Source: Macrostomum lignano (lineage: Eukaryota). Taken from it: a DNA stretch of 64,000 nucleotides. The DNA lies in assembly GCA_002269645.1 (NCBI GenBank), contig NIVC01000130.1, positions 186,001 through 250,000 on the forward strand, in the 5' to 3' direction. This document shows positions 11,577 through 55,777 of the stretch, piece by piece. Both the position numbers and the translations under genes were made by a program. Position 1 is the first letter of the stretch. Every line of letters begins with the position of its first letter. Below the pieces are notes generated by a model, which was given only the letters and a program-made list of their open reading frames with translations, searched no databases and was not told where the DNA came from.

Positions 11577-14500
11577 ATGGCGGTGAGCTACGCCAGCAAC
11601 ATCTACACTAAAGAGAAGCTGTTCTTTTTAAAACTGCTCTTTCGCTGGAACGGCAGTGTTTGGCAATTGCTCTGGGTTGATTTTTTATTCTTTGTATTGG
11701 CCTACGTCAGCTTAGCTGTCTTGTATCATCAATTATTATCTTCTACAAGGCGAATTACATTCGAAGCTGTTATTCGCAGTATTGGATCAATTCGAACTTC
11801 AGTGCCGTTGTCCTTTATGCTCGGCTTCTTTGTCTCTTCGGTTCTTAGTCGGTGAGTGTTTTATCGATAAAATCGATAAAAATCGATAATTGATAATTGC
11901 ATATTGTAAAAGTGAAGGTTAAATTAAATAATTAAATTACATCAAATTGCACGGGGTATTAAATGAGCTAATTGCTGATAAAATTAATTGAAATTCCAAG
12001 ACCTAGCCTACATTCGGCTTTTTGTTTTTTGAACTAATCCATGCTAATATATTTTTAAACGGAGTTCACAAAATCACGATTCACAATGTACAGAAATTTA
12101 AACAAATCCAAAAGTTTGCTTTCTTAACTATTAACACACCGGGTAGTTTTTTATTTCCAGGACCAGAGGTCTTAAAAAATGTTTACCTATTTTCACAGTG
12201 AGAAGTTTCGATCTTGTAAAAAGCAACCCACAAAATGTTTGTTTTAGTTCCAATCTAGACTATAGTTCATCGTGTACTATTAGTAATATTATTGTTTACG
12301 GATCGGAATAAAAAACTTAAACTTTTGAAAATCTGTACTTTTACTTGGAGGGGAAGTAAAAAAATGCGTAAAAATAACTAAGAATGGATTTTTTCTCCTG
12401 TGTCCCTGTGGGTTTTCGCAGACGGTCTGTACTGTACGGTCCTCGTGCCCTTTCTAGGTGAAGTCAGACTTGTGGAAATCTATCTAGCTAGCTGGAGCCA
12501 GTAATTTTAACCCTCGTGTCGAATTTCTTGTTTCTCTATCTCCCTTTCCATCTCGACTGACTCAGTGCGGCATTATGATTTCGTTCGCCCGAACCAAACC
12601 AACCAGGCTTAAACTTCTTTAGTTTTTTTAACTAAAGTTAAAAGGCGAAAAAAGCAATTTCCATATTAGGCACCTTGTTACGAGCGTGCTGACTTTAAAA
12701 TTATTTTTTCCTAGAAAGATTTGGGCCTTGGCTCTCTGGCTTGGTTTCTAATTTTAGCGTTTTTTATTTAGGTAAGAGATAAGGTGGTTTACCCTCGGCC
12801 TCAACTTCCTTCACCCTTGTTAGCCTTAGCCTTAACAAACGAACGTCCTGTCTGACTGACTGACTGACTGATGAAAAAGTAAAGAGCGTGTACTTTTGTA
12901 AATATTATCTGAAGCGAAGGCTATACAAACCAAGCGCACGATAAATCATTGCTTGGAATTCGTGGAAAATTCCACTTGGTAATTTCCACGTGCACGGATA
13001 ACTTCAAGTTTTTTTCTATCCTAACAAGCATCAAGCCAAGTGAAATAGCGAAAGCCCCATTCAGCACCACGACAGATATACGTTGGTTTACCGGCTTTCA
13101 GATCATTTCTAAGAAAACCAAGTGCAGTGTGGAGTTAGAGTCATTACCTACTTGAGTTAATAACTTTTTACTGTAATCATCTATATCATATTGTAACATC
13201 GTTATTCCATTAAAATCGCATCCATAAGACAGTGGATAGATAGCAGGCAATAAAAAAGGCTTGGTCTCTTGGTTGTTCGACATGAGTTCGATTTTTAGAA
13301 AACGACAACTGCAATTTACGACTCCACTTTTATTAAGCGACTGGTGGAAGATGTCTGTCTAACTCCCAGGGACTTGGATTGTCTGTTAACGCAGAGGGAG
13401 AGTGGCAGAAGAGGGAGAGGGAGAGTGGCAGAAGAGGGAGAGGGAGAGTGGCAGAAGAGGGAGAGGGAGAGTGGCAGAAGAGGGAGAGGGAGAGTGGCAG
13501 AAGAGGGAGAGGGAGAGTGGCAGAAGAGGGAGAGGGAGAGTGGCAGAAGAGGGAGAGGGAGAGTGGCAGAAGAGGGAGAGGGAGAGTGGCAGAAGAGGGA
13601 GAGGGAGGGTGGCAGGGAGAGGGAGAGGGAGAGTGGCAGGGAGAGGGAGAGGGAGAGTGGCAGGAAGAGGGAGAGGGAGAGTGGCAGGAAGAGGGAGAGG
13701 GAGAGTGGCAGGAAGAGGGAGAGGGAGAGTGGCAGGAAGAGGGAGAGGGAGACTGGCAGGAAGAGGGAGACTGGCAGAAAGAGGGAGAGTGGCAGGCAGA
13801 TAGAGACTAAGAGGGAGAAGGAGACTGAGAGGAAGATGAAGAGTGGAAGGTGGAGGAAGTGAGTGGATACTGAGAGGTGGAGACAGTAGATTGTAAGAGA
13901 AGGAAAATAGAAGAGAGCAGTGATGGTAAATAAATTATATGATAGTTTTTGCTATCAAGATCTTACGAGAAGTATTAGTCTTAGTCTATATGATTTTACT
14001 TCCCGAATTCAAGTGATTAAGGGGCTGCACTGCATATTTGTGCAAATTCAACCCGCACCATCACCCCACCCCGCACGCATCCTAATCCTGCCCAGCTGGT
14101 GGAGCATGTGCATGGCGATCCCATGGATGCACGCGCCAGCCTTCTACGCGCAAGGCCTAATCGAGAGCTGTCACAAATCGAAATCCGATATTGCTAGAAA
14201 AGTTCGAATCACTGTGCTGCGATATTTCAACCTGGCCTGGATACTAATGATGGCCACTATTTCGCTGCACATCAAGCATCGGTTCGGTTTTATGCGACCG
14301 AAGAATACTCGAGAGTTTAAGCTTACCTGGCGACAGAGACTCGAACTGATCAATTCCGATGCTAAAGTGCAGAAATATTTTGGCAAACTGATCACTGAGG
14401 AGGAGATGCAGGTGTTCGCTAGGTCTGCTGAGCTGTCTAAAGACACCGATTGGACTTATACGCCTGAGTACTGGCTGCCTCTTGGCTGGGCTAACAGAAT

Positions 14501-17500
14501 TATGAGGCGGGCTAAGAATATTGGTGAGTTTTATGTTTTTTTTAGTTTCATTGATTTAATCCTTCAATTTTGATTCAGTATTCTGGTGTTTCTGAGTCTT
14601 TGTGTCTGGGTTGCCTCTGAGTCTTTGTCTAGGGTTGTCTAGAGCTGAGCCTGTCGGTATGGGGGGTGTCCGACTCGAGTCTTTGTCGGTCTGGGTTGTC
14701 TGAGTCTTTGTCTAGGGGTGTCTCTGAGTCTTTGTCTAGGGGTGTCTCTGAGTCTTTGTCTAGGGGTGTCTCTGAGTCTTTGTCTAGGGGTGTCTCTGAG
14801 TCTTTGTCTAGGGGTGTCTCTGAGTCTTTGTCTAGGGGTGTCTCTGAGTCTTTGTCTAGGGGTGTCTCTGAGTCTTTGTCTAGGGGTGTCTCTGAGTCTT
14901 TATCTAGGGTTGTCTAGAGCTGAGCCTGTCGGTATGGGGGGTGTCCGACTCGAGTCTTTGTCGGTCTGGGTTGTCTGAGTCTTTGTCTAGGGGTGTCTCT
15001 GAGTCTTTGTCTAGGGGTGTCTCTGAGTCTTTGTCGGTCTGGGGTGTCTGAGTATTTGTCTAGGGATGTCTCTGAGTCTTTGTCGGCCCTGGTGTCTGAG
15101 TCTTTGTCTGGGGTTGTCTCAGATTCTTTGTATCTATCTGGCATTTCCTCTCAGTCTTTTGTCACTGTACGCCTGAGATATGTCTTTAGTCTCCTCTCCG
15201 CTGTGCCTGCGCTGTGCGCTGTTCATGTTACATCGATCCTAGTCAAGGGGATGGGGGAAGAAGGATCCAGTTCCTTATCTTTACAGAGAGTTAACTATAT
15301 TAGCATGCATGTTCTGTATAGCATGCTTGAACTACTATCGCATGTTGGCATAAATTTGGGATTTGCAGTCAGCTTCAGCTGGTTAACTGGTTCGTCCTCA
15401 TCACTCGTGCAGCGTTATATGTATAGATAATAATACTACTAATATATATACTAAGATAAACGAGGATCTGGCTAGTCTTTTACATCCTGCCATCCCTCGA
15501 GGCGTAGAGGCAGGCCACTGCCAATTTAATTCAGTATGCAACTACTAGCCTGAGCTGCAGTAGCTAGCACACAATTTTGCAGTTTCGCTTGAAAATAATC
15601 AAGGAATGAAGGAAAACGATTAGTGAGATGAAGGGAATCTAACAGTGAGATGTCGAGATGAAGGGAATCTAATAGTGAAATAAAGGGAACCTAATAATGA
15701 GATGAAGGAAATCTAATAGTGAGATGAAAGGAATTCGATAATGAGATAAAGGGAATCCGATAATGAGATGAAGGGAATCCGATAATGAGATGCAGGGAAT
15801 CCAATAATGAGATGAAGGGAATATAATGAGATGAAGGGAACCTAATAATGAGATGAAGGAAATCTAATAGTGAGATGAAGGAAATCTAGTAGTGAGATGA
15901 AGGGAAACTAATAGTGAGATGAAGGGAACCTATTAGTGAGATGGAGGGAAACTAATAGTGAGATGAAGATAATCTAATAGTGAGATGAAGATAATCTAAT
16001 AGTGAGATGAAGGGAAACTAATAGTGAGATGAAGGGAACCTATTAGTGAGATGGAGGGAAACTAATAGAGATGAAGGTACTCTAATAGTGAGATGGAGGG
16101 AATCTAATAGTGAGGTGAAGGAAATCTAGTAGTGAGATGAAGGGAAACTAATAGTGAGATGAAGAGAATCTAATAGTGAGATGAAGGGAACCTATTAGTG
16201 AGATGAAGGGAATCTAAAATTGAGATGCAGGGTAATCTTTCAGAGTGAGATGAAGGGCTGACGTGAGTAATATGTTGAAATTCGGGGTCTCAATTGAGAC
16301 AAATCCCAAATCCCTAACGCACACCGTCGCAGGCTGCATCGCGGACGAGCGCCAGTTCCTGTGGATGGTGACGATCGCGCAGAACTTTCGCAACGATCTC
16401 GGCATTGTGTGGACCTACAGCGAGTTTAACATCCCGCTGGTGTACACCCAGGTCGCCGTCACGGCCGTGTACATCTTCCTGTTCTCCACGCTGCTGTCAA
16501 CTCAGCTGATTGAGTCGGAGGTGGGATTAGATCGGCACTCCCTTGTCAACGGCTCCAGAGTCGACGAGCCGGGGAGCACCACCGGCGTGGAAGTCCTGTC
16601 CCATATCCCCATTTTGGGCTCGTTGGAGTTCATCTTTTATCTGGGTGAGTTGTTAATAGGGGGGGGGAGCGTGTAAAACTGGAGTCACTCAGCACATTTG
16701 CGTGTAAGCTTACTTTCAATTCAGTAGTATGTTCAACAGAAGCATTTTCGTGTATTTTAAAGCCAAGGCATTTATTGGCTCTTACCCCCAGCTTAAACCC
16801 TCCAATCGCGCCTTTTCACACTACGCCCCAGGCGTCACCCCAAATTTTATTGCCTTTCTCGGAATTCCAGTCTAAAGCTGCCATGTACATTTCAGTGGAC
16901 TGGCCAATGTACATTATTGCTGAACCAATTAGCAAGTTGTTTACGCCTGCGAGCTTGGGCTTCTAATCTTATCAAAGTCATTTCAGCTGGCTTGATTTTT
17001 ATAAAATAGCTTTTGTTTTCTTCTTTGCTACTGAACTGGAAGTAGAAAGCTGTTTCACTAAGTATACAGTATATGCCTGAGTGGCCCATCTAAATTTTAG
17101 TATCTGTGGACCAAGCAAAAAATATCCCAAATCTACAACCCGACCAAACTCAAAGATCCCAAATCCTCAACCAGACCAATCTCAAAGATCCCAAATCCTC
17201 AAACAGACCAAACTAAAAGATCCCGAATCCTCAACCAGACCAAACTCAAAGATCCCAAATCCTCAACCAGACCAAACTCAAAGATCCCAAATCCTCAACC
17301 AGACCAAACTCAAAGATCCCAAATCCTCAACCAGAACAAACTCAAAGATCCCAAATCCTCAACCAGACCAAACTCAAAGATCCCAAATCCTCAACCAGAC
17401 CAAACTAAAAGATCCCGAATCCCAACCAGACCAAACTAAAAGATCCCGAATCCTCAACCAGACCAAACTAAAAGATCCCAAATCCTCAACCAGACCAAAC

Positions 17501-18377
17501 TAAAAGATCCCGAATCCTCAACCAGACCAAACTAAAAGATCCCGAATCCTCAACCAGACCAAACTAAAAGATCCCGAATCCCAACCAGACCAAACTAAAA
17601 GATCCCAAATCCTCAACCAGACCAACTGAAAGATCCCAAATGACAAATACTAAGATTCGCGAATCCCAACCTGCCCCAGGCTGGTTCAAGATCGGCATGT
17701 GCCTGATGAACCCGCTCGGCAAGGACAAGGCCGACCTGCCTCTGTCGGAGATCCTCAACTCCAACTTGAAGGTGTCGGTGAAGCTGGGCGGCGCCGAGGA
17801 CTCGCTGTTCCCCGCAGGCCTCACCGACAACGGCGAACCAGAGGAGCAGCAACTCGCCGACCTGTTCCGCACCTTCGACTTCAACGAGGTGCACTCTAAC
17901 GACTCGTTCGGCACAGCCGAAGAGACGGAGGCCCACCTGACCAGAGCCCTGTTGAAGCGGCTGCAACGTCAGGGCAAGGATCTTGTGCACCACCTGGACG
18001 TATTCCAGCTGTCCAGCGGCGCCAAGGCCAAGGCCAAGGCCAACGCCGAGCGCAAGGAAGCTTTAAAATCGCTCACCAAGCCGCAGCAGCAGCAGCATAA
18101 ATTTCAGCAGAAGCAGCAGAAACAACAACAAAAGCAGGGCCTGGTCAGCTTGAGGCCCGCGACGCTGCAGCACCCCAGATCCGCTTCCATGATCGGGCCT
18201 GACACCTCCTCGGTGAACATGTCTCTGGGCGATGATGACAGCAACATCCTGGTGCTAGAAGTCGATGCCAACAGCCAGCAGCGGCGGTCTGACCAGCAGG
18301 AGCAGGGCATTGCCAGGGCTGAGAGTCTGCCTCTCCTGTCTGGCGATGGGAGGGCCGCGTCTGAGCCTCTGGTGTGA
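11577..18377 (+). CDS. BEST: Bestrophin family anion channel (divergent), 4 coding exons, about 570 aa
   Basis: Exons 11577-11851, 14096-14523, 16333-16644, 17680-18377 total 1713 nt with consistent phases (2,1,1). Family motifs: LLFRWNGSVWQLL, VPLSFMLGFFVSSVLSRWW, RYFNL, YWLPLGW, IPLVYTQV, GWFKIGMCLMNPLG, NLKVS. Confidence 0.93.
13395..13860. repeat. Purine-rich minisatellite, 23-bp unit GAGGGAGAGGGAGAGTGGCAGAA
   Basis: Tandem copies in bestrophin intron 1. Confidence 0.9.
14590..15135. repeat. Minisatellite, 24-bp unit TCTGAGTCTTTGTCTAGGGGTGTC, with a duplicated ~60-bp interrupting block
   Basis: The block AGAGCTGAGCCTGTCGGTATGGGGGGTGTCCGACTCGAG occurs at ~14641 and ~14907. Confidence 0.9.
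15610..16255. repeat. Minisatellite, 22-bp unit AATAGTGAGATGAAGGGAATCT
   Basis: Tandem copies in bestrophin intron 2. Confidence 0.9.
16677..17110. mobile_element. TIR element (MITE family B), diverged copy in bestrophin intron 3
   Basis: Shares CACTCAGCACATTTGCGTG, AAAGCCAAGGC, GGAATTCCAG.CTAAAGC, GCTACTGAACTG.AAGTAGAAAGCT and ATGCCTGAGTGGCCCATCTA with the 62 kb copy. The left end is eroded and there is an internal insertion of about 100 bp. Confidence 0.65.
17115..17665. repeat. Minisatellite, 32-bp unit AGATCCCAAATCCTCAACCAGACCAAACTCAA
   Basis: Tandem copies ending just before the exon 4 acceptor. Confidence 0.9.
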
Positions 18378-25351: not shown

Positions 25352-25584
25352 GAGCTGGGGAGGAGCCATGCAGCTGTGAATGCAGCTTCATCAAGCAGAA
25401 GGAATTCCTGTCTGCAGATTGAGCACGCCATCCCGAGGACTCTGCAATCCAACATTTGAAGCAACAATTTCAAAAACGCTTAACAATACAATGACAGATC
25501 TTTGAAATCTTTGCAAACCGAAAGGCCTGAAAATCTTCGGGTCGCGTCTTTGTGTTAATTCCGCTTGAAACTCTTTTGAAACTG

Positions 25585-27095
<1,511 letters not shown>

Positions 27096-27729
27096 GTGAG
27101 TATTAACAACATAGAATAGAAGAAGGCAAACTTCAAATTTAAAACAATAATCCGACACGAAGCTCATAAAACCCAGTCGTTTATTGAAATAGATAAAAAT
27201 ATGCATTAATTTAGCATTAATGTCTTTTGAGACAAGAAAGTGGTTTACGCATAATGTACATAAATAGTAAATTTTTTGCTCATAAGAAAAAAATTAAGCG
27301 GTTGAAGCTTGCAAAAAATGCTTTAAACAAAAATTAACAGATTTGACCGGTTTTGTATTTGTTATAATGCGCAAAATAGTATTAATTTAAATTTGCACGA
27401 CGCACAATAAGTAAAACAAAAATACGCGCATACTCATTGTTTCGATCAGAAAATAAGGCTCGCACAATGCGAACAAGTTAATAAATAGTTGGCCATAAAA
27501 ATATTTAGAATAAAAATGGAAAAATGTTACAAATAAATTTGACGAAAATATCAAACTACAGCGATAGTTTACAGCAAGAGCAGGATAAATAAAGATTTTA
27601 GATTTGAGCTTCTTGAAGGGTTGTAAATCAATTTAACATTTTTGCTATCAAAAGCCACACAGTATTATTTTTTTAATTAATGATTTGAAATAGAGTTGAT
27701 CTCATTTTTTCTCTTGGGGTATTGATAGC

Positions 27730-28959: not shown

Positions 28960-31900
28960 TCACGGATACGAGATGATGTCTTCGCGGTCCATGATCTCCG
29001 CCACCAGAGGGGGGACCTCGCCGCCTGCGTGCTGCATCTTCAGCTGCAGCACGTTGCCAGAACCTGCGGAGCGCGAGATAGAATGCAGGCAGAATAGATT
29101 GGGATGAGACTGGGGAGACTGGGGTGAGACTGGGGGTGAGACTGGGGATAAAACTGTAGATGAAACTGGGGATGAGACTGAGGTGAGACTGGGAGATGAG
29201 ACTGGAAGCGAGACTGAGGTGAGACTGGAAGTGAGACTGGGATGAGACTGGAAGTGAGACTGAGGTGAGACTGGAAGTGAGACTGGGATGAGACTGGAAG
29301 TGAGACTGAGGTGAGACTGGAAGTGAGACTGGGATGAGACTGGAAGTGAGACTGAGGTGAGACTGGAAGTGAGACTGGGATGAGACTGGAAGTGAGACTG
29401 GGATGAGACTGGAAGTGAGACTGGGATGAGACTGGAAGTGAGACTGGGATGAGACTGGAAGTGAGACTGGGATGAGACTGGAAGTGAGACTGGGATGAGA
29501 CTGGAAGTGAGACTGGGATGAGTCTGGAAGAGAGACTGGGATGAGACTGGAAGTGAGACTGAGGTGAGACTGGAAGTGAGACTGGGATGAGACTGGAAGT
29601 GAGACTGGGATGAGACTGGAAGTGAGACTGGGATGAGACTGGAAGTGAGACTGGGATGAGACTGGAAGTGAGACTGGGATAAGACTGGAAGTGAGACTGG
29701 GATGAGACTGGAGATGAGACTGAGGTGAGACTTGGGGATGAGACTGGAAGTGAGACTGGGATGAGACTGGAAGTGAGACTGGGATGAGACTGGAAGTGAG
29801 ACTGGGATGAGACTGGAAGTGAGACTGGGATGAGACTGGAAGTGAGACTGAGGTGAGACTGGAAGTGAGACTGGAAGTGAGACTGGAAGTGAGACTGGGA
29901 TGAGACGGAAGTGAGACTGGGATGAGACTGGAAGTGAGACTGGGATGAGACTGGAAGTGAGACTGAGGTGAGACTGGAAGTGAGACTGGGATGAGACTGG
30001 AAGTGAGACTGGGATGAGACGGAAGTGAGACTGGGATGAGACTGGAAGTGAGACTGAGGTGAGACTGGAAGTGAGACTGGAAGTGAGACTGGGATGAGAC
30101 TGGAAGTGAGACTGGGATGAGACTGGAAGTGAGACTGGGATGAGACTGGAAGTGAGACTGAGGTGAGACTGGAAGTGAGACTGGGATGAGACTGGAAGTG
30201 AGACTGGGATGAGACTGGAAGTGAGACTGAGGTGAAACTGGAAGTGAGACTGGGATGAGACTGGAAGTGAGACTGAGGTGAGACTGGAAGTGAGACTGGG
30301 ATGAGACTGGAAGTGAGACTGAGGTGAGACTGGAAGTGAGACTGGGATGAGACTGGAAGTGAGACTGAGGTGAGACTGGAAGTGAGACTGGGATGAGACT
30401 GGAGATGAGACTGAGGTGAGACTGGAAGTGAGACTGGGATGAGACTGGAAGTGAGACTGGGATGAGACTGGAAGTGAGACTGAGGTGAGACTGGAAGTGA
30501 GACTGGGATGAGACTGGAGATGAGACTGAGGTGAGACTGGGGGATGAGACTGAGGTGAGACTGGGATGAGACTGGAAGTGAGACTGGGATGAGACTGGAA
30601 GTGAGACTGAGGTGAGACTGGAAGTGAGACTGGGATGAGACTGGAAGTGAGACTGAGGTGAGACTGGAAGTGAGACTGGGATGAGACTGGAAGTGAGACT
30701 GAGGTGAGACTGGAAGTGAGACTGGGATGAGACTGGAAGTGAGACTGGGATGAGACTGGAAGTGAGACTGGGATGAGACTGGAAGTGAGACTGGGATGAG
30801 ACTGGAAGTGAGACTGGGATGAGACTGGAAGTGAGACTGAGGTGAGACTGGAAGTGAGACTGGGGTGAGACTGGAAGTGAGACTGGGATGAGACTGGAAG
30901 TGAGACTGGGATGAGACTGGAAGTGAGACTGAGGTGAGACTGGAAGTGAGACTGGGATGAGACTGGAAGTGAGACTGGGATGAGACTGGAAGTGAGACTG
31001 GGATGAGACTGGAAGTGAGACTGGGATGAGACTGGAAGTGAGACTGAGGTGAGACTGGAAGTGAGACTGGGATGAGACTGGAAGTGAGACTGGGATGAGA
31101 CTGGAAGTGAGACTGGGATGAGACTGGAAGTGAGACTGAGGTGAGACCCCAAGTGAGACTGGGATGAGACTGGAAGTGAGACTGAGGTGAGACTGGAAGT
31201 GAGACTGGGATGAGACTGAAAGTGAGACTGGGATGAGACTGGAAGTGAGACTGGGATAAGACTGGAAGTGAGACTGGGATGAGACTGGAGATGAGACTGA
31301 GGTGAGACTGGGGGGTGAGACTGGGGGATGAGACTGGAAGTGAGACTGGGATGAGACTGGAAGTGAGACTGGGATGAGACTAGAAGTGAGACTGAGGTGA
31401 GACTGGAAGTGAGACTGGGGTGAGACTGGAAGTGAGACTGGGGTGAGCGTGTGTATGAGTACGGTATTGGCACGCTTGCATGAGCACAGGCACAGTCAGT
31501 GGAATGGGCAGAGCTGCCGTCAGCGCTGCATGTTTGTGAGACGATGTTGCGCAATCAAACTGCATACCTTTGACTGACACCTCCCTGAGCTGCACAACAG
31601 TGGAGACGATCCTGGCCAATCGGACCCGATCGTTCGGATGGGCAGCTCTGAGGTAGCGCAGCAGCAAGCCGAGGATGTTCTGCTGGCACTGGGACACGCG
31701 ATCTGGGTCCTTCAGCTCCATGTGATCTGCAGTTTTGGTTTCAATTCAAGTCAATTCAGAGATCCCCCTGGTAGAATTCGGCTCGCATCATTATAATAGA
31801 AATGCATTTAAATGATTAATTTGCAAATCTGGAGACGGGGCATTAGGATGGGAGCATGGGAGAATAGTGAAAGCGGAAACTGGTGCAGAGAGTGTGACTG

Positions 31901-34900
31901 AGGACCATTGAGTAGGGATAGGAAGAGGAAAGGAAAATTGGGAGAAAATAGAATGAGTGGGGGGAGTGAGAGCTAAGAGTGTAGGGTCAGATGGGACAGT
32001 GAGAGGGGAGAGTGAGAGAGGAGAGTGAGAGGGGAGAGTGAGAGGGAGAATGAGAGAGTGAGAGGAGAGTGAGAGGAGAGTGAGAGGAGAGTGAGAGGAG
32101 AGTGAGAGGAGAGTGAGAGGAGAGTGAGAGGAGAGTGAGAGGAGAGTGAGAGGAGAGTGAGAGGAGAGTGAGAGGAGAGTGAGAGGAGAGTGAGAGGAGA
32201 GTGAGAGGGAGATTGAGAAGGGAGATTGAGATGGCAATAAGACGGAGAGTGAGAGGGAGAGTGAAAATGAGAGTGAGAGCTTGAAGTTTGGAGATTTAGA
32301 GAGGAGAGTGAGAAGGAGAGCGAGAGGGAGATTGAGAGGGCAGTAAGAGGGAGGGCAAGAGAGAGAGTGAGAGTGGGAAGACAGCGAGTTATGGAAGAAA
32401 GAACGGAACAGAATGAGACAAGAGCTACTCATAGTAGATGCAGGCAGCTGCGGGCACTGAAGCTGTGTCAGACGGTACAGAGCGCTGAGCTGGCCGGACT
32501 CACCGTCGGCAAAGATGGCCACGGCTGCCAGCAACGCCAGCTCCTCGCTGACAAGTCGGTGGCGCGCCAAGCTGCTGCCAATCTGGGCCAGATTGTGGAG
32601 AATATGCCGAAATCCCAGAGCCTCAAGCCCGGCGGAGCTTATGCTGGTTGACGAGAACTGGAATCGGTCAGTCTGGCTGTCGTAGCTGCTGGCCAGCTGC
32701 AGCACGAGGATTTCGTGCATCGCGCACTTCAATAGGGTGCTCTGATCTTCGGGCAGGAGGCTGCTGAATTCGGGCAGCGCTCGGGCGAATGAGATCACGC
32801 GCTGCACTGACGACACCTGGGGGAGTTGGCGATGAGGCTTGAGTCACTGGGATGCACTGATTGAGTCTGGCAGCAGTAGTTGAGTCATCAGTGACATTCT
32901 GACTGAGTCACTAGGGCACCAGTTGAGTCACTGATGGTCTAATTAAGTCGTTCATGGTCTAATTGAGTCATTATAGTGGTCTAATTGAGTCATTATAGTG
33001 GTCTAATTGAGTCATTATAGTGGTCTAATTGAGTCATTATAGTGGTCTAATTGAGTCATTAGTGGTTTAATTGAGTCATCGATGGTCTAATTGAGTAATT
33101 GATGGTCTAATTGAGTAATTAGTGGTTTAATTGAGTCATCGATGGTCTAATTGAGTAATTGATGGTCTAATTGAGTAATTAGTGGTTTAATTGAGTCATT
33201 ATAGTGGTCTAATTGAGTCATTATAGTGGTCTAATTGAGTCATTATAGTGGTCTAATTGAGTCATTATAGTGGTCTAATTGAGTCATTATAGTGGTCTAA
33301 TTGAGTCATTATAGTGGTCTAATTGAGTCATTATAGTGGTCTAATTGAGTCATTGATGGTCTAATTGAGCCATTGATGGTCTAATTGAGTCATTGATTGT
33401 CTAATTGAGTAATTAGTGGTCTAATTGAGTCACTGGTTGTCTAATCGAGTCCTTTGTGGTCTAATTAAGTCCATTATGATGTAATTGAGTCACTGACAGA
33501 CTATGAGGTCCCATCGGTACACAGACTCACATACGTATACTGGTTGAGCACTGATTTAGCAACTTGAGCACATATTTAGATAAACAAATACGGTGACATA
33601 TCCGTTCTGTTTACTTATAGTAGTATCCTACACATGCCACATTATTATTCAATAAACAGCCAGTATAATGCGACTGTGAACTCACCGACAGCAGGTCAGT
33701 GAGCTGCCAGACTCTATCCGCTCCCGCATCAGTTTCATTGTCTCCGCTTATCTGCGCCTCAAAATCTGCAACAGATTCTTCTTTGACGGAATTCTTGTCA
33801 ACTCGTCTGTCAATCAGCTCTGTGTAGGCTCGGCTCAGTGATTCCAACAGTTGAGTGTCTGACTCTGACAGCAACTGCTGCTGCTGCTGCTGGCAGGCTT
33901 GAGCTGTTCTCACTGTTCCCGATGATGTCGCATCGGTTCGAACAGCCTCCCTAGACATGCCGCCAGCGATGCACTTTCTCAGCCGGCAAGACTGACACCT
34001 GTTCCTGGTCTGTCTGGTCACCTCGCATTGATCGGATTTCTGACAGCTGTACACGAGACTCTTCTGAATGCTGCGACGGAAGAAGCCCTGTAAGAACGTT
34101 TGGTTGGAACGTTTTACGTGTACGATTATCAAAGTAAGTACATGTTCTTTGTAGGCTGCACTCCAGGGGCCTAGATCAACCCTGGTGTTACACTACAGGC
34201 CAAGATCAACCCTGGTGTTGCACTACAGGCCAAGATCAACCTATAAGCTACAGATCACATGTTACACTACAGGCCAAGACTAACCCTAAGCTACAGATCA
34301 CATGTTACACTACAGGCCAAGACTAACCCTAAGCTACAGATCACATGTTACACTACAGGCCAAGACTAACCCTAAGCTACAGATCACATGTTACACTACA
34401 GGCCAAGACTAACCCTAAGCTACAGATCACATGTTACACTACAGGCCAAGACTAACCCTAAGCTACAGGTCACATGTTAAACTACAGGCCAAGACTAACC
34501 CTAAGCTACAGGTCACGTATTACACTACAGGCCAAGACTAACACTAAGCTACAGATCACATTTTAAACTTCACAAATCTTAAAACTGGTGCCTCACCTTG
34601 CAGCCTTCGCACGAGCTGACACCGTAGTGATAACCGGAGCTCTTGTCGCCGCACACAACGCAAGGTTTGTACACTCGAGGCGGTGTCAAATCGTTATCAG
34701 CAGCAGCAGCAGTGGCTGCATCCTCATTGTTGTTATTATTGTTGGTGTTGTTGTTGTTGTTGGCATGGCTACCGACTTCCTCCTGTTCAACTTTTTGCCG
34801 GTTTTGTGACGGCTCCAACTTAACCAGTGTTATGGTGGCGGCTGCTTTAGTCTGCTGCTCCTGCTGTTGCTGAACAATGAGATCCGGGTCGCCTTCAGAC

Positions 34901-35100
34901 GACTCGGGCGACACAACAGCACCAACCGACACGGAAGTTTCAGCAGCCGCAGATGTCGCAGACCTCCATCTGTCCTCAGAATCTGTGGTGTCGGTTGCCG
35001 AACAGAAAATTTCTCGCTCTAAACTGCAGATCAGGTCCAGCGTTTCAGCGTGGTCCATTGGCAACGGAATACCGTTGCTAAGGACAACATGCGGATTCAT
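28960..35100 (-). CDS. RAR: Retinoic acid receptor-type nuclear receptor (NR1B), 5 coding exons, about 493 aa
   Basis: Exons 35100-34597, 34087-33686, 32816-32504, 31726-31568, 29063-28960 total 1482 nt with consistent phases. DBD: [29 protein letters not shown]|[15 protein letters not shown]...[28 protein letters not shown]: FARALPEF..L...[36 protein letters not shown]-2 [27 protein letters not shown] and LKM...PPL..E are RAR-specific signatures. Confidence 0.9.
29100..31445. repeat. Minisatellite, 23-bp unit (12+11) GAGACTGGAAGTGAGACTGGGAT (RAR intron 4)
   Basis: 2.3 kb array; source of the 864-aa ORF. Confidence 0.95.
31990..32375. repeat. GA-rich tract, (GAGAGGAGAGT)n (RAR intron 3)
   Basis: Direct reading. 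Confidence 0.85.
32840..33500. repeat. Minisatellite, 22-bp unit GGTCTAATTGAGTCATTATAGT (RAR intron 2)
   Basis: Tandem copies. Confidence 0.9.
34170..34562. repeat. Minisatellite, 43-bp unit TTACACTACAGGCCAAGACTAACCCTAAGCTACAGATCACATG (RAR intron 1)
   Basis: About 8 near-identical copies. Confidence 0.9.
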
Positions 35101-40370: not shown

Positions 40371-43300
40371 TCAGTGAGAAGCAGCAGAAGCGGCAGCAGC
40401 CCGATGCAGGGCCAGCATATGCAGGTGAGCCCTCTCGGTGATGTTGGCCTCAGGCCGGATGGGTTCCAGCCGCTCGTCCTCGAGGCGGAGGGCGGCCAAG
40501 CCGGCCAGAGCCAGGTAGGTGTGCAGCGGGTCGGCGGAGTCGCCCGGATACTTGGAGAAGCCGCCCTCCATGCCGCTGTAGCAGCTGAAAACGAATTCAA
40601 CAAGGGCCGATCGGTCAATCAGATTGGCCCGGCCAAGGGCTGCCAGGGAGGCTCCAATCCAGAACGTATAGCAGGAATCGTCGTCCTTGTACGGTCGGCC
40701 GTGGAAGCCGCGGTGCTGACGCTGGCAAAGCCAGCGCAACAGGCGCGAACGTTGGCGACTATCGGCTGGCAGGGCGGAGTCCAGCCTGCCGAGAAGTTTC
40801 AACGAAGCGATGGCGCAGAAGGTGGAGCCGCCGTGAGCCTCGGAGCCGGGCCGCTGACCGAAGCCGCCTTCGTAGGTCTGGCAGGCCAGCAGGAAGGCGA
40901 CCTACAGATAATTTATCATTTTTTCACAATTTATAGCAAAAATTTACAGCAAAATGTGTGCGTTTCTACTTGAAGTAGAACAATCGCAAATGTTAAGTAG
41001 AATTAGTGACACTGAAAATAATATTGCTGTATAAATATACCGTTTAGTTAGTTTTCAAAAAAAATTCCTCAAAAATATATCAAAATGACATGTTGAGATT
41101 TCCAAGAAACGGTTTCAGAGATTTCCTTGAAACATCAGTTATGTTTTCTTAGAAATTTCAGTTGATGGATTTTTAAAAACAATTTAGAATTTCTCAAATA
41201 TAGAATGGCAGTTTGAGATTCTCTCATTTTAGATATCCAGTCGAAATTACAGATTATGAAGTTTTTCAGAAATTCAGAAAATTGGCCAGAAATTTGAATT
41301 TCCTGGAAACAGCAGAAATAAAACTACCAAGAATAATCAGCAACAGGTGGGGGGGGGGGCGTTCTAAGACATGGCTCGTTGGAATTTTCTAAACCAGTGC
41401 TTGCGGTCCTTGTCGACGTTTGCAGGGCCACAGGCCGGATTGGAAATTCGTTGGAACTTGAAAAACAAAATTTATAATTTCCAGGAAACAGCACAAATTT
41501 GAATTTCATTAACGGATGCGATAAGAATTTCCTAAAAACGGATGCGATAGAAATTCCCTAGAAACGGATGCGGCAGAAATTTCCTAGAAACGGATGTGAC
41601 TAAGAATTTCCTAGAAACGGATGCGATAGAAATTCCATAGAAACGGATGCGGCAGAAATTTCCTAGAAACGGATGTGACTAAGAATTTCCTAACAACGGA
41701 TGCGATAGAAATTCCATAGAAACGGATGCGGCAGGAATTTCCTAGAAACGGATGCGATAAGAATTTCCTAGAAACGAATGCGATAGGAATTTCCTAGAAA
41801 CGGGTGCGGCAGGAATTTCCTAGAAACGGATGCGATAAGAATTTCCTAGAAACGGATGCGATAGGAATTTCCTAGAAACGGGTGCGGCAGGAATTTCCTA
41901 GAAACGGATACGATAAGAATTTCCTAGAAACGGATGCGATAGGAATTTCCTAGAAACGGGTGCGGCAGGAATTTCCTAGAAACGGATGCGGCAGGAATTT
42001 CCTAGAAACGGATGCGATAGAAATTTTCTAGAAACGGATGCGATAGAAATTCCCTAGAAACGGATGCGAAAGGAATTTCCTAGAAACGGATGCGGCAGGA
42101 ATTTCCTAGAAACGGATGCGATAGAAATTTTCTAGAAACGGATGCGATAGAAATTCCCTAGAAACGGATGCGAAAGGAATTTCCTAGAAACGGATGCGAT
42201 AGGAATTTCCTAGAAACGGATCGATAGGAATTTCCTAGAAACGGATGCGATAGGAATTTCCTAGAAACGGATGCGATAAGAATTTCCTAGAAACGGATGC
42301 GATAGGAAATTTCCTAGAAACGGATGCGACAGGAATTTCTTAGAAACGGGTTTTACAAGAATTTCTTAGAAACGCAACAACTGGTGTTTCCTAGAAAGCA
42401 TATTGAAACGGAAGAGGTTCGAATTCCGTTTTTGCGTTTTGAAAGAAACAAAAGCGGCTAGAATTTTCTTAGAAACGTCAGTTTTGGATTTCATAAAGAA
42501 TTTATAACGACATTTAAACAATTCGCTCACACTTCTGTCAACGTCGATTTTGGTGAAATCGTTCAAATAATAGCAGGACACGCAGGCGGAGAACACGAAT
42601 CGCAAGTCGCTTTCCGGAGCAAATTTGCCAGCCGTGAAGCAGCCCGCCGGCGTCTGCAGGGCCGCAACTCCGCTGAGAACGGCGTCTCGATCGACTCGTT
42701 GAAGATCGTCGCCGAGCATGAGCAGGATGCCCAGGCCGGCGAATACCATGGTGAGGTGGCTGGCATCGTACGGCAGCGGATTCTCGGCGTCCAGGTGCGG
42801 ATCCGCCGGGCTGCCCAGCAGGGGAGCGCCGCGGAAGCCGCAGTTGGCAACGGGCCGGCCGGAGCTGGGGAGAATCTGAAGGCTGTACACCCAGTCTATG
42901 ATCTCCTGCCTGCGGGAGGCGTTGTGCGGGATTAGGGTGAGATTAGATGCCGGTTTAGGGTGAGATTAGATGTTTGATTAGGGTGAGATTAGATGTGGTA
43001 TTAGGGTGAGATTAGTTGCTGGATTAGGGTGAGATAAGATGCTAGATTAGAGTGAGATTACATTAAATGCTGGATTAGGGTGAGATTAGATGCTAGATTA
43101 GGGTGAGATTGGATGCTAGATTAGGGTGAGATTAGATGCTAGATTAGGGTGAGATTAGATGTGGGATTAGGGTGAGATTAGATGCTTGAACAGGTGCTAG
43201 ATTCGAATGAGATTAAATGCTGGATTAGGATGAGATTAGATGATAGATTAGACTGAGATTAGATGATAGAAGATTAGACTGAGACTAGATGATCAGAACT

Positions 43301-48100: not shown

Positions 48101-49182
48101 AGACAGTGGAGAGGACGCACAGACAGTAGAATGTGATGAACTGAAATTTGATTGCCGAATATTTGGCTTATTTAGTCATGAATTGTTTAAAAGTTAGGCT
48201 ACCTAAAACTCTACCCAACTACAGCAAAACCTACCTAAATCTTACCCTAATTACAGCAAAAGCACCGTAATTACAGCAGTAGCTACCTAAATCTCACCCT
48301 AATTACAGCAAAGCTACCTAAATCTTACCCTTATTACAACAAAGCTACCTAAATCTCACCCTAATTACAGCACAGCTACCTAAATCTCACCCTAATCACA
48401 ACAAAAGCTAACTAAATCTCCCGCTAATTACAACAAAGCTACCTAAATCTCACCCTAATTACAACAAAGCTACCTAAATCTCACCCTAATTACAACAAAG
48501 CTACCTAAATCTCACCCTAATTACAACAAAGCTACCTAAATCTCACCCTAATTACAACAAAGCTACCTAAATCTCACCCTAATTACAACAAAGCTACCTA
48601 AATCTCACCCTAACTACAACAAAGCTACCTAAATCTCACCCTAACTACAACAAAGCTACCTAAATCTCACCCTAACTACAACAAAGCTACCTAAATCTCA
48701 CCCTAATTACAACAATCTGTCTAAGAATAACAATAAAAGCAAACTAAATGGCAGCAAAAACTCACATATTTGGCCCACCCAGTCTTGGCAGCCTTGAGCA
48801 TCAACACAGCCCACGGAACCACTAGAAAGGGCAGCCAGAGTCCAAAAGCCCAGCAGTTATGCAAATTAATACTAATAGGATAACTCTGGTCTGGGTCTGA
48901 GTACATGAGAGGCAGTACGATGACTACGGCCATAGACAGTATGAGCAGGCAGGCGGCGCATAGCAGGGCTACAATAGACTGAATTATGAATAGCGTAGGC
49001 CGGCCAGCATACTCAACTATAAGCAGATTTCTCATACTGTCAGATTGCTCATCATTGATTCTCTGTTGTTGACGGGCCGATATAGGCGCCCTTGGCAGAT
49101 TGCCAACGTTAGAGAGGTCCTCGTTGGCTTGAAGTTCGTCAACCTCGTCAATTGGATTTGAGAATTGATTGCCTGATGACAT
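45104..49182 (-). CDS. Four-pass membrane protein, MS4A/CD20-like, 3 exons, about 237 aa
   Basis: Exons 49182-48766, 48140-48021, 45280-45104, all phase 0 with GT-AG. Four hydrophobic segments. AFGLWLPFLVVPWAVLMLKAAK...FYCLCVLSTVCCAALVVL resembles the CD20-family TM2-TM3 pattern. The family assignment is by eye. Confidence 0.7.
45340..47935. repeat. Minisatellite, 26-bp unit GGGTCAATGATAGTG(A/G)GTCACACTGT, about 100 copies (MS4A-like intron 2)
   Basis: 2.6 kb homogeneous array. Confidence 0.95.
48200..48715. repeat. Minisatellite, 31-bp unit CAAAGCTACCTAAATCTCACCCTAATTACAA
   Basis: Tandem copies in MS4A-like intron 1. Confidence 0.9.
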
Positions 49183-55012: not shown

Positions 55013-55050
<38 letters not shown>

Positions 55051-55462
55051 GTGTCTGTCTGTCTATCTCAGTGTCTGTCTGTCCGTCTGTCCGTCTGTCT
55101 GTCTGTCTGTCTGTCTGTGTGTCTGTCTGTCTATCTCAGTGTCTGTCTGTCTGTCCGTCTGTCTGTCTGTCTGTCTGTGTGTCTGTCTGTCTGTCTATCT
55201 GTCTATCTCAGTGTCTGTCTTAGTGTCTGTCTGTCTTAGTGTTTGTCTGTGTGTCTGTCAGTCTTAGTGTCTGTCTGTCTGTCTGTCTGTGTGTGTGTCC
55301 GTCTGTCTGTCTATCTGTCTATCTCAGTGTCTGTCTGTCTGTCTGTCTGTGTGTGTGTGTGTGTGTGTCTGTCTGTCTATCTCAGTGTCTGTCTGTCCGT
55401 CTGTCTGTCTGTCTGTCTGTCTGTCTGTGTGTCTGTCTGTCTATCTCAGTGTCTGTCTGTCC

Positions 55463-55500
<38 letters not shown>

Positions 55501-55534
55501 GTGTCTGTCTGTCTATCTCAGTGTCTGTCTGTCC

Positions 55535-55568
<34 letters not shown>

Positions 55569-55777
55569 GTGTCTGTCTGTCTATCTCAGTGTCTGTCTGT
55601 CTGTCCGTCTGTCTGTCTGTCTGTCTGTGTGTCTGTCTGTCTGTCTATCTGTCTATCTCAGTGTCTGTCTTAGTGTCTGTCTGTCTTAGTGTTTGTCTGT
55701 GTGTCTGTCAGTCTTAGTGTCTGTCTGTCTGTCTGTCTGTGTGTGTGTCCGTCTGTCTGTCTATCTGTCTATCTCAG

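What the first reader, a model, noticed from the sequence alone, without database searches (positions are those of the whole stretch)
28960..35100. Intact retinoic acid receptor (RAR/NR1B) orthologue in a probable flatworm genome
Seen: five exons splice into an uninterrupted 493-aa receptor. Its DBD ([38 protein letters not shown]) and LBD C-terminus (VKG..VLQLKMQ...PPLVAEIMD) carry RAR-specific signatures, including the VVC/GVSS variant seen in annelid and mollusc RARs. Established: RAR is known from deuterostomes and several spiralians but is generally reported missing from planarians and parasitic flatworms. Inference: if this DNA is from a macrostomid, RAR was retained in early-branching flatworms and lost later, offering a tractable regenerating model for ancestral RAR function. 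It may already be listed in automated nuclear-receptor surveys.
Basis: partly seen in the sequence, partly recalled or inferred. Interest (0 to 1): 0.8.

Follow-up and report, generated by a model that had tools for sequence, protein, structure and literature searches.

The report
Overlooked retinoic acid receptor in Macrostomum
The window holds an intact five-exon gene for a retinoic-acid-receptor (RAR) family protein from the flatworm Macrostomum lignano, a phylum where RAR was published as absent; the gene had been listed only as an unclassified 'NR1a', and its ligand pocket has lost the two arginines that normally hold retinoic acid.

Summary
On the minus strand, five exons (35100-34597, 34087-33686, 32816-32504, 31726-31568, 29063-28960), all GT..AG, splice into a 493-aa nuclear receptor.

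Its 66-aa DNA-binding domain (DBD) is identical to 'MlNR1a' on Macrostomum lignano scaffold Mlig_3_7:scaf1238. Wu & LoVerde 2021 filed that gene as a divergent NR1 and stated that RAR is missing from all flatworms.

Four lines of evidence point to RAR (NR1B):
- The best database and PDB hits are all RARs.
- Per-family profiles favour RAR in the DBD and in the ligand-binding domain (LBD) separately, by 40 bits together.
- Maximum-likelihood placement puts it at the RAR stem (likelihood weight >0.999, RELL 0.80-0.87). The M. lignano TR control goes to TR at 100%.
- It shares the RAR-only intron and the 159-nt exon found in fish, brachiopod, mollusc and annelid RARs. These are absent from TRs, 2DBD-NRs and schistosome NR1a.

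It also has spiralian RAR hallmarks (CVVC/GVSSC, 8-residue tail ending in Pro).

Caveats: the LBD is divergent (31-34% identity), a simple distance tree fails, and Arg274 and Arg278 are replaced by Gln and Ser, so canonical retinoic-acid binding is doubtful. Its relation to parasite NR1a ('SmRAR') stays unresolved. Expression is untested.

The parts
34597..35100 (-). Exon 1 (504 nt). Holds the ATG at 35100-35098, the A/B domain (Q- and N-rich), the pre-DBD motif PPRVYKPC and the first zinc finger. It ends after CEGCK (phase 0).
   Evidence: model; in-frame stops upstream of the ATG. (zf-C4). (the intron position DBD29 phase 0 is shared by all NR1 genes mapped).
34088..34596 (-). Intron 1 (GT..AG). 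Mostly a 43-nt tandem array (34216-34569) plus a 30-nt array.
33686..34087 (-). Exon 2 (402 nt). Holds the second zinc finger (CQKSDQC...CQSC), the RAR-type T-box [10 protein letters not shown], the hinge, helix 1 and the start of helix 3. It ends at ..TDLLS (phase 0). This intron position is not seen in the other RARs mapped.
32817..33685 (-). Intron 2 (GT..AG), with a 20-22-nt tandem array (32923-33492).
32504..32816 (-). Exon 3 (313 nt). Covers LBD helices 3 to 8. It includes the substituted pocket positions of helix 3 and helix 5 (F230>T, K236>S, R274>Q, R278>S) and the retained Phe288/Ser289. It ends in phase 1 at ..AIFAD|D (alignment column LBD123, shared widely among NR1 genes).
31727..32503 (-). 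Intron 3 (GT..AG), with an 11-nt GA-rich array (32003-32373).
31568..31726 (-). Exon 4, exactly 159 nt. It is flanked by phase-1 introns at LBD123 and LBD176 (..VSVK|G). The same exon length and boundaries occur in Capitella, Lottia, Lingula and fish RAR genes. They are absent from the TR, 2DBD-NR and schistosome NR1a genes mapped.
29064..31567 (-). Intron 4 (GT..AG), 2.5 kb. Almost entirely a 23/46-nt tandem array (29096-31447, about 100 copies of the 23-mer).
28960..29063 (-). Exon 5 (104 nt, TGA stop included). Holds the end of helix 11, the AF-2 helix 12 core PPLVAEIMD and an 8-residue tail REDIISYP. Spiralian RARs have a 101-nt last exon and the tail R.ENVCIP.

Best explanation
This is the retinoic acid receptor (NR1B) family gene of Macrostomum lignano or a very close relative. 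It is the same locus that Wu & LoVerde catalogued from its DBD alone as 'MlNR1a'.

Shown: it is an intact five-exon gene encoding a classical one-DBD, one-LBD nuclear receptor that descends from the bilaterian RAR gene and carries spiralian-type RAR features.

Inferred mechanism:
- It binds AGGTCA-type half-sites through an unchanged CEGCKG P-box and a RAR-type T-box. Like other RARs, it probably does so as a heterodimer with RXR; the published M. lignano survey lists two RXRs.
- It recruits coregulators through a preserved AF-2 helix (PPLVAEIMD). The helix-12 Glu is kept, and the helix-3 clamp Lys is conservatively replaced by Arg.
- The polar end of the ligand pocket is remodelled. Arg274, Arg278 and Lys236 (human RARgamma numbering) are Gln, Ser and Ser.
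- It is therefore unlikely to clamp the carboxylate of retinoic acid in the canonical way. More likely it is a low-affinity or altered-specificity sensor, or a ligand-independent regulator, as reported for mollusc RARs.

Automated annotation missed the gene (no GenBank protein). A plausible reason, not tested, is that every intron is packed with tandem repeats.
For: Gene and organism:
- The model and domains are confirmed.
- The DBD is 66/66 identical to MlNR1a on Mlig_3_7:scaf1238.
- No near-identical protein exists among 5.8 billion clusters or 1.84 billion representatives; the best hit is 39-44% identical. This agrees with the missing PAA accession for NR1a in Wu & LoVerde's S5 table.

RAR identity:
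1. All 120 best hits are RARs. In the PDB, RARbeta scores 232 bits and RARgamma 229, against 153 for the next family, LXRbeta. The LBD alone hits RARs at 102-114 bits and the oyster and Lineus TRs tested at 86-90.
2. Per-family HMMs favour RAR. DBD: 142 versus at most 128. LBD: 143 versus TR 128. Both together: 301 versus at most 261. The M. lignano TR control scores as TR in both domains.
3. ML placement on 104 labelled NRs puts it at the stem of RAR. The likelihood weight is 0.9996 and RELL 0.80, rising to 0.87 once a mis-grouped orphan is blanked. TR gets 0.0005 for the combined domains. The TR control lands in TR at 100%. The DBD alone gives RELL 0.82 for RAR.
4. Signature motifs PR[IVM]Y[KR]PC, GMS[KR][ED].VR.D, PPL..[MI][ML][DE] and the short tail ending in Pro occur in the RAR-named sequences and in a few unlabelled top hits, and in none of 80 labelled non-RAR receptors. 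The candidate has 4 of 5. CVVC/GVSSC and the 8-residue tail match spiralian RARs.
5. Gene structure: the LBD176 phase-1 intron and the 159-nt exon are present in four RAR genes from fish to annelid and in the candidate. They are absent in two TRs, two 2DBD-NRs and S. bovis NR1a.

Pocket: among 119 RAR-named sequences, R274 is Arg in 118 and R278 is Arg in 115. The candidate has Gln and Ser. W227, L233, F288, S289, G393 and L400 are kept.

Structure: the AF2 model of the LBD has pLDDT 79.6 and a canonical NR fold.
Against: - The LBD is only 31-34% identical to RARs and about 32% to some TRs.
- A BLOSUM-distance neighbour-joining tree does not place the gene in the RAR clade. It sits near the tree centre beside long-branch sequences.
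- LBD-only ML placement was ambiguous until the orphan P0275 was blanked, and even then RELL is only 0.59.
- ML support comes from placement on a fixed NJ backbone with a home-made Gonnet-derived model, not from a full tree search.
- The best placement is at the stem of RAR rather than among spiralian RARs, so an old RAR-like paralogue is not strictly excluded.
- Two RAR-type introns (DBD76, LBD55) are missing, and one intron (in helix 3) is at a position not seen in the other RARs mapped.
- Foldseek does not separate RAR from LXR.
- Transcription, splicing, DNA binding, RXR pairing and ligand binding were not tested.
- Species identity rests on one 66-aa protein identity. Independent checks gave nothing.
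Confidence: 0.8

Rival explanations
1. It is a flatworm-specific divergent NR1 orphan ('NR1a', the SmNR1 lineage) with no orthologue outside the phylum, as Wu & LoVerde 2021 classified it. On this view the RAR-like features are retained ancestral NR1 characters or convergence.
For: - Wu & LoVerde's DBD-only phylogeny groups it with SmNR1 and outside all named NR1 groups.
- The LBD is divergent.
- The NJ tree does not recover it within RAR.
- The candidate and parasite NR1a both lack Arg278.
Against: - That classification used 66 DBD residues only.
- With the LBD added, RAR wins in profiles, ML placement, motifs found in none of the labelled non-RAR receptors and a RAR-only intron and exon.
- The candidate's LBD scores 102-114 bits against RARs but only 19-32 bits against the 14 parasite NR1a LBDs that gave a score.
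- Parasite NR1a does not attach to the candidate in ML placement; RELL for 'sister to candidate' is 0.02-0.33 singly and 0.04 as a clade.
Confidence: 0.08
2. It is an ancient paralogue of the RAR/TR stem, or a TR-related receptor, rather than the orthologue of RAR.
For: - The best ML placement is on the stem of the RAR group, not nested among spiralian RARs.
- TR is the second-best LBD profile (128 versus 143).
- 'Deep/other' placements take 10-15% of RELL replicates for the combined domains.
Against: - M. lignano already has TR genes, and the TR control behaves cleanly as TR.
- TR placement has RELL 0.0005 for the combined domains and 0.025-0.036 for the LBD alone.
- The candidate lacks the TR-type intron LBD37 phase 0 and has the RAR-type LBD176 phase 1.
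- It shares features specific to spiralian RARs: CVVC/GVSSC, the 8-residue tail ending in Pro, and a last exon of 104 versus 101 nt.
- Stem placement is the usual artefact for a fast-evolving orthologue.
Confidence: 0.07
3. It derives from a 2DBD-NR (the two-DBD receptors of flatworms and molluscs) that lost its first DBD.
For: - In the NJ tree and in the first LBD-only ML run the candidate attached to the group I had labelled '2DBD-like'.
- The 2DBD-like LBD profile scored 127.
Against: - The attraction was to P0275, which is not a 2DBD-NR. It has one DBD and a RAR-like T-box, and scores 48 on the leave-one-out 2DBD profile.
- Without P0275 the 2DBD profile scores 111 against 143 for RAR, and RELL for the 2DBD group is 0.02.
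- The window has a single zinc-finger module.
- The 2DBD-NR diagnostic introns LBD33 phase 1 and LBD150 phase 1 are absent.
Confidence: 0.02
4. The locus is an unexpressed relic or a very recent pseudogene that only looks intact. This concerns activity, not family identity.
For: - No protein or transcript-derived product matching it is in the public protein collections searched.
- GenBank annotation of M. lignano lacks it.
- The key pocket arginines are lost.
Against: - 1482 nt of open frame run across five exons with four canonical splice pairs.
- All eight zinc-binding cysteines, the P-box, the T-box, the LBD signature and the AF-2 helix are conserved.
- The substitution pattern is conservative in the hydrophobic core.
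- Repeat-filled introns could explain the annotation failure; this is an inference.
Confidence: 0.05

Closest known systems
Spiralian RARs (NR1B): annelid Platynereis/Capitella, molluscs (Nucella, Lottia, Patella, Crassostrea), brachiopod Lingula, nemertean
   Same: - One DBD and one LBD, with P-box CEGCKG.
- PR[IV][21 protein letters not shown]-box GMS+EAVR.D, AF-2 core PPL..E[MI][ML]D, and an 8-residue tail ending in Pro.
- Introns at DBD29 phase 0, LBD123 phase 1 and LBD176 phase 1, with a 159-nt penultimate exon.
- They are the best sequence matches.
- The PDB Platynereis-type RAR LBD entry 6eu9 scores 114 bits, above the human RAR LBDs at about 88. That 6eu9 is Platynereis is from my memory.
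   Different: - Much more divergent: DBD about 70% and LBD 31-34% identical, whereas these RARs are typically far closer to each other.
- Arg274 and Arg278 are replaced by Gln and Ser. Those RARs keep Arg or Lys at position 278 (Fonseca et al. 2019, PMC6947571).
- It lacks the DBD76 and LBD55 introns and has its own intron in helix 3.
- The A/B domain is long and Q/N-rich.
Platyhelminth 'NR1a' group: SmNR1 (Wu et al. 2007), which is Smp_144170 'SmRAR' (Moescheid et al. 2024, PMC11879061)
   Same: - Wu & LoVerde placed MlNR1a in this group by DBD phylogeny.
- SmRAR has exactly the SmNR1 DBD.
- Both have [13 protein letters not shown], a T-box beginning GMSR, and lack Arg278.
- S. bovis NR1a carries the RAR-type intron LBD55 phase 0, which the TRs lack.
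   Different: - Parasite NR1a LBDs are extremely diverged: 19-32 bits against the candidate, and no family preference in profile scoring.
- They lack the LBD176 intron.
- Their ML placement is unstable and not specifically with the candidate.
- Orthology between the Macrostomum gene and SmNR1/SmRAR is therefore unproven.
Rotifer RAR-like receptors (Brachionus; P0254) and a Logan-derived relative (P0175)
   Same: - Fast-evolving protostome receptors that group with RAR.
- P0254 has the DBD closest to the candidate (76% identity).
- Both sit at the base of the RAR clade.
- Fonseca et al. 2019 accept a rotifer RAR with very low LBD conservation.
   Different: - P0254 and P0175 keep both pocket arginines.
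- Their LBDs score lower on the RAR profile than the candidate does: 90 and 123 bits against 143.
Thyroid hormone receptors (NR1A), including M. lignano TR (P0313)
   Same: - Sister family with the same P-box.
- Shares introns DBD29 and LBD123.
- Second-best LBD profile.
   Different: - The TR profile is 27 bits lower in the DBD and about 14 bits lower in the LBD.
- The TR-specific intron LBD37 phase 0 is absent.
- TRs have no RAR motifs and no LBD176 intron.
- ML RELL for TR is 0.0005 for the combined domains and 0.025-0.036 for the LBD alone.

Membership tests
RAR (NR1B) | Classical nuclear-receptor architecture: one C4 zinc-finger DBD with P-box CEGCKG, plus one LBD | tested here: met
   Pfam zf-C4 at E=7e-31 and Hormone_recep at E=1.7e-12. 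Cysteine spacing is intact. The window has a single zinc-finger module.
RAR (NR1B) | RAR-specific sequence signatures flanking the DBD (PR[IV]YKPC before it; T-box GMS[KR][ED].VR.D after it) and in helix 12 (PPL..E[MI][ML][DE]) | tested here: met
   All three are present. Among 289 receptors they occur only in RAR-type sequences, and in none of 80 labelled TR, 2DBD, LXR, EcR/FXR, NR4A, RXR, E78, ROR, Rev-erb or E75 proteins. The helix-11 motif is missed by one conservative residue.
RAR (NR1B) | Closest similarity to RARs over both domains when compared with all other NR families | tested here: met
   All top 120 hits are RARs. PDB: RARbeta/gamma 229-232 bits against 153 for the next family. 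Family HMMs: RAR is best in the DBD (+14 bits), the LBD (+14.5) and both together (+40). The M. lignano TR control classifies correctly.
RAR (NR1B) | Phylogenetic placement within or at the stem of the RAR clade | tested here: met
   ML placement gives likelihood weight 0.9996-0.9999 and RELL 0.80-0.87 for the RAR total group. The DBD alone gives RELL 0.82. The LBD alone gives 0.37, or 0.59 after blanking orphan P0275. Support is moderate, the method is placement on a fixed backbone, and a distance NJ tree failed.
RAR (NR1B) | RAR-type gene structure: phase-1 intron in helix 11 (..S.K|G..) closing a 159-nt exon | tested here: met
   Present in Albula (fish), Lingula, Lottia and Capitella RAR genes and in the candidate. 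Absent in M. lignano TR, oyster TR, two 2DBD-NRs and S. bovis NR1a. Outgroup sampling is limited to these families.
RAR (NR1B) | Carboxylate-anchoring pocket residues (Leu233, Lys236, Arg278, Ser289, plus Arg274; human RARgamma numbering). This defines the retinoic-acid-binding function, not descent. | tested here: not met
   Leu233 and Ser289 are kept. Lys236 is Ser, Arg274 is Gln and Arg278 is Ser. Among 119 RAR-named sequences, Arg274 is Arg in 118 and Arg278 is Arg in 115. The residue list is from Fonseca et al. 2019.
RAR (NR1B) | Binds retinoic acid and transactivates; heterodimerises with RXR on DR elements | not testable with these tools
   Needs ligand-binding, reporter and EMSA assays. 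Sequence shows only that the AF-2 Glu and the P-box are intact.
2DBD-NR | Two tandem DBDs (the first with a CEACKKFF-type P-box), and introns at LBD33 phase 1 and LBD150 phase 1 | tested here: not met
   The gene and window have one DBD only. Both diagnostic introns are absent.
TR (NR1A) | TR-type DBD and LBD, with a TR-type intron at LBD37 phase 0 | tested here: not met
   TR profiles are lower than RAR in both domains. The intron is absent. ML RELL for TR is 0.0005 for the combined domains and 0.025-0.036 for the LBD alone.
Platyhelminth NR1a (SmNR1/'SmRAR' lineage) | Orthology with Schistosoma SmNR1, as defined by Wu & LoVerde's DBD tree | tested here: inconclusive
   The DBD is the published MlNR1a. 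Full-length parasite NR1a proteins, however, show no specific affinity to the candidate. Hints of a shared RAR origin are the LBD55 phase-0 intron and the GMSRDAVR T-box in S. bovis.

The most novel reading that the evidence does not exclude
The whole flatworm 'NR1a' lineage is the phylum's RAR orthologue. That lineage includes SmNR1/'SmRAR', which controls oocyte differentiation in Schistosoma. On this reading RAR was never lost in Platyhelminthes. The slowly evolving Macrostomum gene is the missing link that shows this, and the loss of the carboxylate-clamping arginines at the base of the phylum marks a switch to another ligand or to ligand-independent action.
Probability: 0.3. Interest if true: 0.7.

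Novelty: new member of a known kind. Interest (0 to 1): 0.55.

Why it matters
Wu & LoVerde 2021, the most complete flatworm survey among the papers I could search, state that RAR is missing from all Platyhelminthes analysed, M. lignano included. None of the RAR-evolution papers I could search (Fonseca 2019, Handberg-Thorsager 2018, Miglioli 2021) reports a flatworm RAR.

A genuine RAR-family gene in an early-branching, experimentally tractable, regenerating flatworm changes the reconstructed gene-loss history of retinoid signalling in Spiralia. It also gives a reference point for judging whether the schistosome receptor recently named 'SmRAR' really is a RAR.

The replacement of the two arginines that are nearly invariant in RARs and also present in TRs makes it a natural experiment in how a hormone receptor changes or loses its ligand.

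The result is incremental rather than revolutionary. RARs are already known from many spiralian phyla, the locus was already catalogued under another name, and a 'RAR-like' label already exists for the trematode relative.

Tried and rejected
1. Distance tree (BLOSUM62 Scoredist plus NJ). The candidate sat at the tree centre next to long-branch sequences. I judged this to be long-branch attraction, because ML placement, profiles, motifs and introns all disagree with it. The attracting taxon P0275 proved to be a mis-grouped single-DBD orphan.
2. Searching with the 66-aa SmNR1 DBD alone. It returned only 25 short fragments and was useless. A composite query of ten DBDs worked.
3. Species check by exact ORF look-ups, by a lineage-specific 153-aa neighbour ORF placed in the composite query, and by blastn of the window against a known M. 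lignano contig, L004. There were no ORF hits, and the only shared DNA was (TCTG)n simple repeats. These checks say nothing either way.
4. Rfam scan of the window: no hits.
5. AF2 model plus Foldseek against the PDB. The fold is a canonical NR LBD, but LXRbeta and RAR structures tie (TM about 0.75-0.8). This does not discriminate between families.
6. Placing parasite NR1a proteins singly and as a nine-sequence clade. Results were unstable or unresolved: deep 0.36, 2DBD-like 0.33, RAR 0.20, sister to candidate 0.04. I make no claim about their orthology.
7. Zebrafish RARgamma-b locus look-up failed because the isoform is not on record. A different fish RAR was used instead.
8. Gutierrez-Mazariegos 2014 (Nucella RAR) is not held in the library. 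Pocket residues were taken from Fonseca 2019 instead.


Full report
OBSERVATION

The gene lies on the minus strand. I rebuilt the model from the raw sequence. It has five exons at + coordinates 35100-34597, 34087-33686, 32816-32504, 31726-31568 and 29063-28960. Every intron is GT..AG. The CDS is 1482 nt and encodes 493 aa. In-frame stops lie just upstream of the ATG.

Pfam finds one zf-C4 domain (residues 146-214, E=7e-31) and one Hormone_recep domain (residues 304-457, E=1.7e-12). All four introns are filled with tandem arrays; intron 4 alone holds about 100 copies of a 23-nt unit. A six-frame motif scan finds only this one nuclear-receptor zinc-finger module in the 64 kb.

ORGANISM AND PRIOR LISTING

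The 66-residue DBD is identical to 'MlNR1a (prjna371498 scaffold:Mlig_3_7:scaf1238)' in supplementary file S2 of Wu & LoVerde 2021 (PMC8363021). So the window is Macrostomum lignano or a very close relative.

That paper obtained only the DBD. It called the gene a divergent NR1 orthologous to Schistosoma SmNR1. [quoted passage not shown] Its S5 table shows that NR1a has no GenBank protein and was not found by Cheng et al. 2021.

In line with that, neither the 5.8-billion-cluster search nor the exhaustive 1.84-billion-representative search contains a close relative; the best is 39-44% identical. Independent species checks gave nothing either way.

IS IT A RAR?

Similarity. All 120 best hits are RARs of molluscs, annelids, a brachiopod, a nemertean, bryozoans and vertebrates. 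Against the PDB, RARbeta scores 232 bits and RARgamma 229, while the next family (LXRbeta, also DBD+LBD) scores 153. With the LBD alone, RARs score 102-114 bits, the oyster and Lineus TRs tested score 86-90, and true 2DBD-NRs about 50. Raw identity is not decisive. The DBD is about 70% identical to RARs, but the LBD is only 31-34%, close to the 32% seen with some TRs.

Family profiles. I aligned 104 non-redundant receptors to DBD and LBD HMMs. Clades were labelled from database names and from matches to published DBDs. I then built one HMM per family. The candidate scores best on RAR in the DBD (142 versus at most 128), in the LBD (143 versus TR 128) and in both together (301 versus at most 261). 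The equally fast-evolving M. lignano TR (P0313) scores as TR in both domains, which validates the approach.

Trees. A BLOSUM-distance NJ tree did not recover the candidate within RAR. It attached near the tree centre on a tiny internal branch, next to long-branch proteins.

I therefore wrote an ML placement. It uses a reversible rate matrix derived from the Gonnet matrix, four gamma categories, and ML-optimised branch lengths on the 104-taxon backbone. The query is inserted on every branch, and support comes from RELL resampling. Results for the candidate:
- The best three placements are the stem of (core RAR plus rotifer RAR-like), the stem of core RAR, and the stem of the whole RAR group.
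- Likelihood weight for the RAR group is 0.9996.
- RELL is 0.80 for RAR, 0.15 deep, 0.05 '2DBD-like' and 0.0005 TR.
- The M. lignano TR control lands in TR with RELL 1.0.
- The DBD alone gives RAR 0.82. The LBD alone was split between one '2DBD-like' taxon (0.50) and RAR (0.37).

That taxon, P0275 from Bulinus, is not a 2DBD-NR. It has one DBD and a GMSKEA T-box, and scores 48 on a leave-one-out 2DBD profile against 77 on RAR and E75. With P0275 blanked, RAR gets RELL 0.87 (all sites) and 0.59 (LBD only), and the best non-RAR placement is 9.6 lnL units worse for all sites.

Motifs. PR[IVM]Y[KR]PC, GMS[KR][ED].VR.D, PPL..[MI][ML][DE] and a short tail ending in Pro occur in the RAR-named sequences and in a few unlabelled top hits. 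None of 80 labelled non-RAR receptors has any of them. The candidate has four of the five motifs tested. CVVC/GVSSC is the protostome RAR state (34 sequences, against CFVC in 85). The 8-residue tail REDIISYP parallels R.ENVCIP of mollusc, annelid and brachiopod RARs.

Gene structure. I mapped exon-intron structures exactly onto fetched genomic loci (mapping).
- Introns at DBD29 phase 0 and LBD123 phase 1 are shared by all families and carry no information.
- The phase-1 intron at LBD column 176 (..S.K|G..) and the resulting 159-nt exon are present in fish (Albula), Lingula, Lottia and Capitella RAR genes and in the candidate.
- They are absent from M. lignano TR, oyster TR, two 2DBD-NRs (Lineus, and a Saccostrea gene mis-named HR3) and S. 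bovis NR1a.
- TRs instead have LBD37 phase 0. 2DBD-NRs have LBD33 and LBD150, both phase 1. The candidate has none of these.
- The candidate's last exon is 104 nt, against 101 nt in spiralian RARs.
- The candidate lacks two RAR-type introns (DBD76, LBD55) and has one of its own in helix 3.

Taken together, I regard RAR-family membership as well supported (about 0.85). The honest caveats are that phylogenetic support is moderate and came from a placement method rather than a full tree search.

HOW IT PROBABLY WORKS

Shown by sequence:
- The P-box, zinc-finger geometry and T-box are RAR-like.
- The AF-2 core and its Glu are kept. The helix-3 clamp Lys is Arg.
- The hydrophobic pocket positions W227, L233, L271, F288, G393 and L400 are conserved, and others are conservatively changed.

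Also shown: the polar anchor is gone. Fonseca et al. 2019 name Leu233, Lys236, Arg278 and Ser289 as the residues that hydrogen-bond the retinoic acid carboxylate. In the candidate Lys236 is Ser, Arg278 is Ser and the neighbouring Arg274 is Gln. Among 119 RAR-named sequences, Arg274 is Arg in 118 and Arg278 is Arg in 115, and both are Arg in TRs too.

Inference: the protein is a DNA-binding regulator, probably an RXR partner, that does not clamp retinoic acid canonically. It may be a weak or re-tuned sensor, or ligand-independent as reported for mollusc RARs.

An AF2 model of the LBD (pLDDT 79.6) has the canonical fold. Helix 12 is modelled with low confidence, and Foldseek cannot separate RAR from LXR.

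RELATION TO PARASITE 'NR1a' / 'SmRAR'

A 2024 paper named Smp_144170 'SmRAR' and showed that it controls oocyte differentiation (PMC11879061). Its supplementary sequence has exactly the SmNR1 DBD. So SmRAR, SmNR1 and the NR1a group are one lineage. That paper did not include Macrostomum, and its tree treats even C. elegans NHR-23 as 'RAR-like'.

In my tests, full-length parasite NR1a proteins (retrieved) have extremely diverged LBDs. They score 19-32 bits against the candidate and show no family preference. Their ML placements are unstable whether placed singly or as a clade.

Hints of RAR ancestry are the RAR-type LBD55 phase-0 intron and the GMSRDAVR T-box in S. bovis. Whether the Macrostomum gene and SmRAR are orthologues, and hence whether RAR was ever lost in flatworms, remains open.

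NOVELTY AND VERDICT

The locus is already in the literature, DBD only, as MlNR1a. Its identity as a RAR-family gene with a RAR-type LBD and gene structure is, within the library I could search, unreported. It contradicts the published statement of RAR absence in the phylum.

It is a new member of a known family in a phylum where that family was thought missing, and it has an unusual pocket. Interest is moderate to good for nuclear-receptor and spiralian evo-devo specialists.

Noticed in passing
window 13920-18377 (+), 40371-42890 (-), 53712-58867 (-), 60234-63014 (+): Neighbouring genes seen as exon-sized ORFs with Pfam hits: a bestrophin-like channel, a prenyltransferase beta subunit, a TMEM184/Ost-alpha family membrane protein and an SLC22/MFS-type transporter.
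   Followed up: partly
window 29096-31447, 32003-32373, 32923-33492, 34168-34569; also about 25500-27100 and about 55200-56900: Every intron of the receptor gene is dominated by a different tandem array (23/46-nt, 11-nt, 20-22-nt, 30/43-nt units). Elsewhere, (TCTG)n-like arrays create many long spurious ORFs. This may be why automated annotation missed the gene.
   Followed up: partly
window 48721-49182 (-): A 153-aa ATG-initiated ORF with two hydrophobic, transmembrane-like stretches. It has no Pfam match and no homologue in the composite database search. It may be a lineage-specific small membrane protein or not a gene at all.
   Followed up: partly
L007 (Schistosoma bovis, gene for P0319, the orthologue of SmNR1/'SmRAR'): The schistosome NR1a gene has the RAR-type intron at LBD column 55 phase 0 and a 171-nt exon like Capitella RAR, plus a GMSRDAVR T-box. 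It lacks the RAR LBD176 intron and has Glu at the Arg278 position. These are mixed signals about RAR ancestry.
   Followed up: partly
P0275 (Bulinus truncatus KAH9504298.1; not in the window): A 1056-aa snail protein with a single DBD (P-box CEACKG), a RAR-like T-box GMSKEA and a truncated, divergent LBD. It behaves as a long-branch attractor for the candidate's LBD and was wrongly grouped with 2DBD-NRs by NJ.
   Followed up: partly
L009 (Saccostrea echinata, P0403): A protein named 'probable nuclear hormone receptor HR3' is in fact a two-DBD nuclear receptor. Its first P-box is CEACKKFF, and it has the same LBD33 and LBD150 introns as the Lineus 2DBD-NR.
   Followed up: yes
L004 (M. lignano TR locus, NIVC01000985.1) versus window 26400-27000: The only DNA shared between the window and this known M. 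lignano contig is (TCTG)n-type simple sequence, about 88% identical over about 400 nt. Nothing remains after low-complexity masking.
   Followed up: yes
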